The position numbers and the translations under genes were made by a program. From Octopus sinensis (taxonomy: Eukaryota): 64,000 nucleotides of DNA. Below the pieces are notes generated by a model. That model had not been told where the DNA came from and searched no databases. It saw only the letters and a list, made by a program, of their open reading frames with translations. The stretch is from the NCBI RefSeq assembly GCF_006345805.1, contig NC_043004.1, forward strand, positions 28,520,001-28,584,000, read 5' to 3'. Below are positions 44,789 through 44,890 of the stretch, piece after piece (within the stretch, counting starts at the first letter, position 1; each line of letters starts with the position of its first letter).

Positions 44789-44890
44789 AGTATCCTACGC
44801 TGATGAGAAAAGAAGTTTGGGTAAGGTAGAATTTTCTAATTCTTATGCTTTCCTAAAACTTGATTTCGAAACGTACGTCCGTAGGTGACT
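44789..44890 (+). ncRNA. Type I hammerhead ribozyme; predicted cleavage after C44879
   Basis: Helix I CCTACG(44794-99)/CGTAGG(44880-85); CTGATGA 44800-06; helix II closed by G44807-C44867; GAAA 44868-71; helix III C-[GTAC]-G; GTC triplet 44877-79. All core nucleotides canonical. Confidence 0.85.

What the first reader, a model, noticed from the sequence alone, without database searches (positions are those of the whole stretch)
44789..44890. Intact type I hammerhead ribozyme, sense strand, in an intron of the Polycomb gene
Every core base is canonical and all helices pair. Helix I is 6 perfect bp plus 3 more (AGT/ACT) beyond a 2x2 loop. Helix II is an unusually long 61 nt (4 bp, 2x2 loop, 6 bp, further pairs, TAGA-ATTT-TCTA cap). 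Helix III is minimal with palindromic ACGTACGT, as in dimer-capable metazoan hammerheads. It lies about 1.07 kb upstream of the 45952 exon and would cut the pre-mRNA after 44879. The other hammerhead-like motifs I found in the window are broken, so this copy is either young or maintained, as with conserved intronic hammerheads in amniote genes. Downstream TCTTTGACTGCTATTTCTAA (45005-45024) recurs on the minus strand near 10045-10065, suggesting a repeat origin. No tandem partner is nearby.
Basis: partly seen in the sequence, partly recalled or inferred. Interest (0 to 1): 0.85.

Follow-up and report, generated by a model that had tools for sequence, protein, structure and literature searches.

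The report
Solitary hammerhead ribozyme in BMI1 intron
A complete, textbook-shaped self-cutting RNA motif (a type I hammerhead ribozyme of the kind carried by animal retroelements) sits alone in an intron of an octopus-like BMI1/Polycomb gene. It is most likely a leftover of a mobile element and not a new gene-control device, and its only unusual trait is a very long second stem.

Summary
At 44789-44890(+) every hammerhead core base is canonical: CUGAUGA, G10.1-C11.1, GAA, A15.1-U16.1 and C17. Helix I has 6 perfect pairs plus 3 more, helix II is a 61-nt irregular hairpin, and helix III is the palindrome ACGUACGU. Cleavage would fall after 44879. A pattern this complete is expected about 0.002-0.009 times per Gb by chance. 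Rfam's Hammerhead_1 model aligns end to end but scores only 23.1 bits (threshold 34), because it skips the long helix II.

The host gene is a BMI1/PCGF4-like Polycomb RING-finger gene on the + strand, and the motif lies sense in the 3.6-kb intron 42378-45951.

The motif sits in a 304-nt unique segment between the two longest (TA)n arrays of the window. The 3' tail of that segment recurs at 9995-10065(-), also next to (TA)n. There is no second hammerhead, tandem partner or retroelement ORF nearby.

As a monomer helix III hardly forms (P=0.004); a two-copy double hammerhead is favoured by about 8 kcal/mol.

Best reading: a solitary, retroelement-derived type I hammerhead, weakly active or inactive alone, with no shown host role. 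Copy number and orthologous loci could not be checked, because no cephalopod DNA was reachable. Domestication remains untested and unlikely.

The parts
44789..44791 (+). Distal closing stem of helix I, 5' strand (AGU). It pairs with 44888-44890 beyond a 2x2 internal loop (44792-44793 / 44886-44887) that sits where loop 1 lies in canonical type I hammerheads.
   Evidence: pair probability 0.55-0.90 in most contexts
44794..44799 (+). Helix I, 5' strand, CCUACG (positions 2.6-2.1)
   Evidence: six Watson-Crick pairs with 44880-44885
44800..44806 (+). Catalytic core C3 U4 G5 A6 U7 G8 A9 (CUGAUGA)
44807..44867 (+). Helix II, a 61-nt irregular hairpin. From the core outward: G10.1-C11.1 plus 3 A-U pairs, a 2x2 internal loop (AG/GA) where loop 2 normally lies, 6 bp, then about 14 more pairs with bulges, then a 4-nt cap.
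   Evidence: z=-3.68; Rfam's model skips 57 nt here
44868..44870 (+). Catalytic core G12 A13 A14
44871..44878 (+). Helix III, the palindrome ACGUACGU. Alone it gives A15.1-U16.1 and C15.2-G16.2 closing a GUAC loop. With a second copy it forms an 8-bp intermolecular helix.
   Evidence: monomer pair probability 0.004; dimer -63.6 versus 2 x -27.7 kcal/mol
44879..44879 (+). C17. The predicted self-cleavage is between 44879 and 44880, leaving a 2',3'-cyclic phosphate and a 5'-OH (general hammerhead chemistry).
   Evidence: position read; chemistry from established knowledge; not assayed
44880..44890 (+). Helix I 3' strand CGUAGG (1.1-1.6), loop UG, and distal ACU
44772..45075 (+). 304-nt unique segment (GC 35.5%) that carries the hammerhead at its 5' end. 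Candidate inserted unit or retroelement fragment.
   Evidence: no other copy of its first 233 nt in the window
45005..45075 (+). 3' tail of the segment. It recurs at 9995-10065 on the minus strand and is again followed directly by (TA)n.
   Evidence: 20/20 exact core; 77% over about 100 nt
44669..44771 (.). Upstream (TA)n microsatellite flank
   Evidence: 52 copies, 88% matches
45076..45295 (.). Downstream (TA)n microsatellite flank, the longest in the window
42322..42377 (+). Upstream exon of the BMI1/PCGF4-like host gene (..QDQILQNLVYKMVPGLFS). The intron 42378-45951 holds the hammerhead.
   Evidence: splice sites and reading frame read by eye (inferred)
45952..45999 (+). Downstream exon of the host gene (NEMKRRRDYYIKHPCS), 1,072 nt after the cleavage site

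Best explanation
This is a genuine type I hammerhead ribozyme sequence of the canonical metazoan kind. It has a 6-bp helix I followed by an internal loop, a 4-bp base of helix II, and a 2-bp helix III with a palindromic tetraloop. It is present as a single copy in a 304-nt segment that most likely entered the BMI1-like intron as part of a non-autonomous retroelement. Candidates are a retrozyme- or Sm-alpha-like SINE unit, or the terminal part of a Penelope-like element, landing in or next to a (TA)n microsatellite.

When the intron is transcribed, helices I and II should form locally. Helix III is too weak to form in one copy. The motif is built to work as a double hammerhead with a second copy, and none is nearby. 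It therefore probably cleaves the pre-mRNA after C44879 slowly or not at all, and has no selected role for the host gene.

Shown here: the motif, its improbability by chance, its gene context, the weak monomer and strong dimer helix III, and the repeated tail.

Inferred: the retroelement origin, the low activity, and neutrality for the host.
For: - All core positions and helices are present.
- The chance rate for the full pattern is 0.002-0.009 per Gb.
- Rfam Hammerhead_1 aligns over its whole length (1-45), including the family's palindromic ACGnnCGUC helix III. It is the best clan member, at E=7.6e-4 in the local search.
- The 6-bp / 4-bp geometry and the short palindromic helix III are the traits the literature gives for metazoan type I hammerheads, which reside in retrozymes, SINE-like elements and PLEs and act as dimers (PMC4209133, PMC7229834, PMC6765202).
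- Monomer helix III probability is 0.004. The dimer gains about 8 kcal/mol and folds as a classic double hammerhead.
- The segment is 304 nt and AT-rich, within the 170-400 nt retrozyme unit size (PMC7229834).
- It lies between the two longest (TA)n arrays of the window. PLEs show insertion bias for microsatellites, including (TA)n (PMC8557442).
- Its 3' tail plus (TA)n is a repeat found again at 9995-10065(-).
- The intron is full of other mobile-element debris: SINE ends and mariner remnants.
Against: - No second copy of the hammerhead or of the first 233 nt of the segment exists in 64 kb, so there is no direct proof of a repeat family.
- No RT or GIY-YIG ORF and no tandem unit lies nearby.
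- (TA)n arrays are common here, about 17 in 64 kb, so the flanks are only suggestive. The chance that a neighbouring array lies within 320 nt is roughly 8%.
- Segment GC equals background GC.
- The motif shows no decay, which a long-dead neutral relic would be expected to show.
- Searches for copies elsewhere found nothing, but the reachable databases hold almost no cephalopod genomic DNA.
- In one flank context (44761-45076) an alternative fold outcompetes the hammerhead.
Confidence: 0.6

Rival explanations
1. Domesticated intronic ribozyme. The hammerhead is kept by selection in the BMI1-like gene and cuts the nascent pre-mRNA to tune splicing or transcript yield, as proposed for the amniote RECK/CTCL/DTNB intronic hammerheads. 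The long helix II could serve as a regulatory platform.
For: It is on the sense strand, inside an intron of a dosage-sensitive regulator. It is perfectly intact, with no other copy in 64 kb. Helix II is unusually long and stable. A precedent for co-opted type I hammerheads exists (PMC6155905, PMC3088659).
Against: The weak, dimer-type helix III is the hallmark of retroelement hammerheads and predicts poor monomer activity (PMC4209133). The motif sits in a microsatellite-flanked segment with a repeated tail. No conservation data of any kind could be obtained. Intact solitary copies are also expected from recent insertions.
Confidence: 0.07
2. Dead ribozyme. A once-canonical hammerhead whose loop 2 was replaced or expanded into a 50-nt hairpin. 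This would destroy the loop 1-loop 2 contact, so the RNA no longer cleaves at cellular Mg2+ in any arrangement.
For: Canonical metazoan motifs have a 4-bp helix II capped by a small loop that touches loop 1 (PMC4209133). Here that loop is an AG/GA internal loop continued by about 20 more pairs. Rfam's model must skip 57 nt and falls below threshold.
Against: The internal loops lie at exactly the canonical distances from the core, 6 bp in helix I and 4 bp in helix II. Internal loops can make the contact, as loop 1 of type I motifs already is an internal loop. The core and all closing pairs are untouched. Minimal hammerheads still cleave at higher Mg2+.
Confidence: 0.2
3. Chance look-alike. This is AT-rich intron sequence that happens to satisfy the hammerhead consensus and has no ribozyme ancestry.
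For: The motif is simple, and consensus matches are expected by chance in large databases (PMC3088659). A generic descriptor hits about 137 times per Gb of random sequence. The Rfam score is sub-threshold and would not be significant genome-wide. The same linear core pattern occurs 4 times in metagenomes without any helices.
Against: With the family-typical details added (U7, G10.1-C11.1, helix I >=6, fully palindromic short helix III), the expected count drops to 0.002-0.009 per Gb. That figure does not yet count the extra 3-bp helix I extension or the significantly stable helix II.
Confidence: 0.05

Closest known systems
Canonical metazoan type I hammerheads of satellite, SINE-like and non-LTR retrozyme repeats (Rfam RF00163 Hammerhead_1; Schistosoma Sm-alpha, newt and axolotl, mussel, coral)
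   Same: Type I topology and a full canonical core. Helix I is 6 bp followed by an internal loop. Helix II has a 4-bp base with G10.1-C11.1. Helix III is 2 bp plus a palindromic tetraloop, matching the Rfam consensus ACGnnCGUC. The host segment is AT-rich and about 300 nt. The double-hammerhead fold is favoured (PMC7229834, PMC4209133).
   Different: It is a single copy, not a tandem array. Helix II is extended to 61 nt, with loop 2 replaced by an internal loop. The Rfam score is 23.1, below the gathering score of 34. No circRNA or copy-number evidence is available.
Minimal hammerheads in the pseudo-LTRs of Penelope-like elements (Cervera & de la Pena 2014; Lunse et al. 2017)
   Same: Type I, with a larger-than-usual helix II, a palindromic 15.2-16.2 / loop 3, and dimer-dependent activity. 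The elements favour microsatellite targets and often leave fragmentary copies (PMC4209133, PMC8557442, PMC6765202).
   Different: There is no unpaired base between A9 and G10.1. Helix I is 6 bp, not 4-5 bp. No RT/GIY-YIG ORF and no second flanking repeat lies within reach.
Conserved intronic hammerheads of amniotes (HH9/HH10; RECK, CTCL/C10orf118, DTNB introns)
   Same: A type I motif on the sense strand inside an intron of a protein-coding gene. It is solitary, not tandem, and thought to descend from retroelement hammerheads (PMC6155905, PMC3088659).
   Different: Those are defined by deep conservation at orthologous loci and by demonstrated self-cleavage as single motifs. Neither is known here, and helix III here is of the weak dimer type.
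Discontinuous hammerhead in mammalian Clec2 3' UTRs
   Same: A hammerhead core tolerating a very long insertion in one of its helices within an mRNA precursor (PMC6155905).
   Different: That motif is type III, with the 150-1500 nt insertion in helix I. Here the 61-nt extension is in helix II of a type I motif.

Membership tests
Hammerhead ribozyme (general definition) | Conserved core: C3 U4 G5 A6 N7 G8 A9, G12 A13 A14, A15.1-U16.1, H17 | tested here: met
   CUGAUGA 44800-44806, GAA 44868-44870, A44871-U44878, C44879
Hammerhead ribozyme (general definition) | Three helices radiating from the core, with a G10.1-C11.1 closing pair | tested here: met
   Helix I is 6+3 bp. Helix II is 4 bp + 6 bp + more, closed by G44807-C44867. 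Helix III is only 2 bp plus a GUAC loop. Helix III is unstable alone, P=0.004.
Hammerhead ribozyme (general definition) | Mg-dependent site-specific self-cleavage 3' of position 17 | not testable with these tools
   Needs in vitro transcription and cleavage assays or end mapping
Rfam RF00163 Hammerhead_1 (type I) | Covariance-model score at or above the curated gathering score (34 bits) | tested here: not met
   No hit at gathering or at E<=10 on 281 nt. On 108 nt the hit is 23.1 bits, E=7.6e-4, over the full model 1-45, with 57 nt of helix II skipped.
Canonical metazoan type I hammerhead | Open helix I of about 6 bp and helix II of about 4 bp, placing loops 1 and 2 for a tertiary contact | tested here: inconclusive
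   Internal loops lie exactly 6 bp (helix I) and 4 bp (helix II) from the core. Loop 2 is an internal loop and not a hairpin loop, and the contact cannot be judged from sequence.
Canonical metazoan type I hammerhead | Short helix III (1-2 bp) capped by a small palindromic loop; dimer-capable | tested here: met
   ACGUACGU is present. Cofold gives an 8-bp intermolecular helix III, -63.6 versus -55.4 kcal/mol. The feature is as described in PMC4209133.
Metazoan non-LTR retrozyme | Tandem repeats (two or more units of about 170-400 bp), each with a type I hammerhead | tested here: not met
   One hammerhead in 64 kb. No repeat of the unit. Unit-size and low-GC criteria are met, at 304 nt and 35.5%.
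Metazoan non-LTR retrozyme | Expression as small circular RNAs | not testable with these tools
   No transcriptome data are reachable
Penelope-like element pLTR hammerhead | Location in terminal repeats flanking an RT + GIY-YIG ORF | tested here: not met
   No such ORF is recognisable near the motif. The one GIY-YIG-like guess elsewhere in the window (11716-12123-) was not supported by Pfam. A solo fragment cannot be excluded.
Penelope-like element pLTR hammerhead | Min-HHR traits: an extra unpaired base between A9 and 10.1, and helix I of 4-5 bp | tested here: not met
   G10.1 follows A9 directly and helix I is 6 bp. Criteria are from PMC4209133.
Domesticated intronic hammerhead (HH9/HH10-like) | Sense-strand location in an intron of a conserved gene | tested here: met
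   Intron 42378-45951 of the BMI1/PCGF4-like gene, + strand
Domesticated intronic hammerhead (HH9/HH10-like) | Conservation at the orthologous locus across distant species | not testable with these tools
   The protein search returned no cephalopod BMI1 to fetch loci from. Exact-ORF look-ups were empty.

The most novel reading that the evidence does not exclude
The hammerhead is a host-maintained, single-locus ribozyme conserved in the BMI1/PCGF intron of cephalopods. Its extended helix II would act as a binding platform or switch that controls co-transcriptional cleavage of a Polycomb pre-mRNA. This would be the first domesticated intronic hammerhead outside amniotes.
Probability: 0.05. Interest if true: 0.7.

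Novelty: new member of a known kind. Interest (0 to 1): 0.3.

Why it matters
Type I hammerheads are already known in thousands of copies in many invertebrate genomes, so one more copy is not surprising. I found no open-access paper describing hammerheads in cephalopods. The finding has three uses.

- It flags that octopus genomes carry canonical, dimer-type hammerheads. That predicts an unannotated ribozyme-bearing retroelement family, and possibly circRNAs, in cephalopods.
- It shows a variant that curated Rfam thresholds miss. The 61-nt helix II replaces loop 2 with an internal loop, which is relevant to how such scans are tuned.
- It gives a concrete, cheap test case for whether solitary intronic hammerheads affect host pre-mRNA.

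If the motif were conserved at this locus, it would extend ribozyme domestication beyond amniotes.

Tried and rejected
- Rfam at curated thresholds and at window scale gave no hammerhead. Only a 108-nt search showed the sub-threshold full-length match.
- Search for relatives by DNA pattern in metagenome contigs (CTGATGAG N40-70 CGAAACGTACGTC) gave 4 hits. None had helix I or II pairing, so they are chance matches.
- Search for copies via spurious ORFs through the element found nothing: the 69-aa minus-frame query and the 42-aa plus-frame query against 1.84 billion representatives. These databases hold almost no cephalopod six-frame ORFs, so the negatives say little.
- Exact look-ups of two window ORFs, to fetch the same or an orthologous locus, found nothing on record.
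- The BMI1 exon query confirmed the gene but returned no cephalopod protein, so orthologous introns could not be fetched.
- I followed the repeated tail through the neighbouring LINE-like ORF at 10179-10454(-). Relatives exist, but their homology stops before the tail. A long ENA contig carrying a 67%-identical relative shares no DNA similarity with the window. The tail is therefore not shown to belong to that LINE.
- The upstream 233 nt of the hammerhead segment is not significantly similar to the sequence upstream of the second tail copy: score 44 versus shuffle mean 35, sd 5.5.
- There is no tRNA-derived SINE head; ARAGORN found no tRNA.
- My guess that ORF 11716-12123(-) was a GIY-YIG endonuclease, and hence a PLE in the window, is not supported by Pfam.
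Two of them are copies of one inverted repeat.
I did not repeat it, as no long complex ORF exists there.

Full report
**What is in the sequence.** I read window 44600-45100 directly. The stretch 44789-44890 on the + strand reads AGU-AU-CCUACG-CUGAUGA-[61 nt]-GAA-ACGUACGU-C-CGUAGG-UG-ACU.

In standard hammerhead numbering:
- C3-A9 is 44800-44806.
- G10.1 is 44807 and pairs with C11.1 at 44867.
- G12 A13 A14 is 44868-44870.
- A15.1 (44871) pairs with U16.1 (44878), and C15.2 (44872) pairs with G16.2 (44877), around a GUAC loop.
- C17 is 44879, so the scissile bond is 44879/44880.
- Helix I is six Watson-Crick pairs (44794-44799 with 44880-44885). Beyond a 2x2 internal loop there are three more pairs (44789-44791 with 44888-44890).

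The 61-nt helix II starts with four pairs, then a 2x2 AG/GA internal loop, then six pairs, then about 14 further pairs with bulges. The only difference is the register of the helix II cap, where the MFE prefers AGAAUU/AAUUCU over UAGA/UCUA.

**Is it more than chance?** My own descriptor requires CUGANGA, helix II of at least 3 bp and up to 90 nt long, GAAA, helix III of at least 2 bp, H17, and helix I of at least 4 bp. It finds exactly this one site on both strands of the window. In 400 composition-matched Markov windows it hits 0.06 times per window.

A 510-Mb simulation gave these rates:
- about 137 generic hits per Gb;
- 47 per Gb with helix I of at least 6 bp;
- about 4 per Gb when G10.1-C11.1 is also required;
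- none with a short, fully palindromic helix III as well.

An analytic estimate that reproduces the simulated 4 per Gb gives 0.002-0.009 per Gb for the full canonical pattern, or about 1e-7 to 6e-7 per window. That figure does not count the extra helix I extension. It also does not count the stability of the whole motif (z=-2.96) or of helix II alone (z=-3.68). The literature warns that consensus matches occur by chance in big databases (PMC3088659). That warning applies to the generic descriptor, not to this degree of detail. I put chance at about 5%.

**What curated models say.** Rfam 15 reports no hammerhead at gathering thresholds, on a 281-nt slice at E<=10, or in a whole-window E<=1 scan. 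On a 108-nt slice, with laxer filters, RF00163 Hammerhead_1 aligns over its entire length (1-45) at 44794-44885. The score is 23.1 bits against a gathering score of 34, with E=7.6e-4 for that small search.

The model consensus is aUccagCUGAcGAGU-[10]-ACGAAACGcgCGUCcuggAu. The window has CCUACGCUGAUGAGA-[57]-UCGAAACGUACGUCCGUAGG. Core, helix I and the family's palindromic helix III therefore match, and the deficit comes from the skipped helix II. Formal Rfam membership is not met. Descriptor-level membership in the hammerhead class is met.

- the RING exon at 8307-8414 (81% identity);
- 42320-42409;
- 45927-46070;
- 48471-48542.

Reading the splice sites gives exons 42322-42377, 45952-45999 and 48442-48550. 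Joined, they translate to ...VYKMVPGLFS|NEMKRRRDYYIKHPCS|DSEV...ERIIYSEDEKISLSLEF. A database search with this peptide returns BMI1/PCGF4 proteins from vertebrates, molluscs, annelids and arthropods. The hammerhead is therefore sense-strand in the 3,574-nt intron 42378-45951. It lies 2.5 kb from the donor and 1,072 nt from the acceptor. 'Polycomb gene' is right in the sense of a Polycomb-group RING finger (Psc/BMI1) gene.

**Surroundings.** The motif opens a 304-nt unique segment (44772-45075, GC 35.5%, the same as the window). The segment is bounded by (TA)n arrays at 44669-44771 and 45076-45295. These are the two longest of about 17 such arrays in the window.

The last ~70 nt of the segment, plus the (TA)n, recur at 9995-10065 on the minus strand. 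The identity is 77% over about 100 nt, with a 20/20 exact core where 0 is expected. The first 233 nt, hammerhead included, have no second copy in the window.

Nothing else hammerhead-like exists in 64 kb. The other CTGATGAG words are unrelated, and two of them belong to an inverted repeat pair. The rest of the intron and window carry SINE 3' ends with microsatellite tails, mariner remnants and a LINE fragment.

**Folding behaviour.** Helices I and II form with probability 0.56-0.99 in contexts of 102, 201, 301 and 801 nt. In the exact 316-nt inter-microsatellite context an alternative fold wins, and helix I drops to P=0.04.

Helix III has P=0.004 in every context. Forcing the hammerhead fold costs about 3 kcal/mol. 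Two copies cofold into the classic double hammerhead, with an 8-bp intermolecular ACGUACGU helix and swapped helix I strands, at -63.6 kcal/mol against 2 x -27.7. This is the behaviour described for newt, PLE and other metazoan type I hammerheads, which cleave poorly as monomers and need a nearby second copy (PMC4209133, PMC7229834, PMC6765202).

**Interpretation.** The literature gives these traits for canonical metazoan type I hammerheads: helix I of 6 bp, helix II of 4 bp, and helix III of 1-2 bp with a small palindromic loop. They live in tandem retrozyme repeats of about 300 bp, in SINE-like elements and, in minimal form, in PLE terminal repeats (PMC4209133, PMC7229834, PMC6765202). PLEs show insertion bias for microsatellites, (TA)n included (PMC8557442).

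The window's motif matches the canonical architecture, the unit size and the microsatellite setting, and part of its segment is demonstrably repetitive. I therefore read it as a solitary, retroelement-derived hammerhead. It could be a young insertion or a lucky survivor. It probably does little to the BMI1 transcript, because its partner for dimer formation is missing.

It fails the defining test for a retrozyme (no tandem copies). It fails two tests for a PLE min-HHR (no bulge after A9, no ORF or second repeat). So I file it only under 'canonical type I hammerhead', with its carrier element unidentified.

The 61-nt helix II puts an internal loop where loop 2 should be, and that is the one unusual trait. 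It may preserve the tertiary contact, since the loops sit at the canonical 6-bp and 4-bp distances. Alternatively it may have killed the contact, which is the dead-ribozyme rival at 0.2.

**What could not be done.** The decisive data are copy number in the source genome and presence at orthologous loci. These were out of reach:
- The protein search returned no cephalopod BMI1.
- Exact-ORF look-ups were empty.
- ORF-based searches for copies were empty.
- The metagenome pattern scan gave only chance hits.
- Contigs reached through the neighbouring LINE fragment were unrelated at the DNA level.

The domestication idea is therefore neither supported nor refuted. Given the dimer-type helix III and the repeat-like setting, I give it about 5-7%.

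**Verdict.** This is a new member of a known kind, of modest interest (0.3).

Noticed in passing
window 12667-12773 (-): Full-length U6 snRNA match (94.8 bits). It lacks the 3' T-run, has two substitutions in the conserved GCAUGGCCCCUGCGCAAGG stretch, and runs directly into an octopus-SINE-like sequence (AGGCGCAGGAGTGGCTGTGTGG...). It is probably a U6 retropseudogene or U6-SINE chimera, antisense in the large BMI1 intron.
   Followed up: partly
window 10179-10454 (-): C-terminal fragment of a retrotransposon ORF (..WPDIVVRDHEEKKCFLIDVSIPADDNVSLKEMEKLSKYKDLEIEVTRMWNLKTETIPIIVGALG). From memory it resembles the restriction-like endonuclease end of R2/NeSL-type LINEs. It has 87 relatives, including an Octopus bimaculoides protein (89%), and no Pfam hit. 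The repeated 'tail' shared with the hammerhead segment lies about 115 nt downstream but is not part of the conserved element.
   Followed up: partly
window 6213-7206 (+) and 39486-40155 (+): Mariner/Mos1-like transposase remnants. Pfam HTH_48 matches the first (E=1.7e-7). The second is judged by eye only.
   Followed up: partly
window 30992-31031 and 31716-31755: A 40-nt inverted repeat pair, 88% complementary, 684 nt apart. Its copies carry the CTGATGAG words at 31050(-) and 31693(+). They are two copies of one repeat with no hammerhead helices.
   Followed up: partly
window 43380-43560 and 45551-45635 (+): 3' parts of a SINE-like repeat, each followed by a microsatellite tail ((CA)n/(TA)n at 43560-43794 and (AC)n at 45672-45768). 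Similar SINE-derived sequence recurs many times across the window, visible as recurring ORF translations.
   Followed up: no
window 44529-44554: A perfect 26-nt palindrome (..AATCGCTAGTTATAACTAGCGATT..) about 240 nt upstream of the hammerhead. A second 8-bp hairpin, ACAATTAT-TC-ATAATTGT, lies at 44770-44787 directly before the motif.
   Followed up: no
window-wide, e.g. 22141-22223, 50114-50186, 52655-52723: Dozens of sub-threshold Rfam 'miRNA' matches (mir-297, mir-466, mir-3149, mir-1277) fall on TA/CA microsatellites. These are composition artefacts, not genes.
   Followed up: yes
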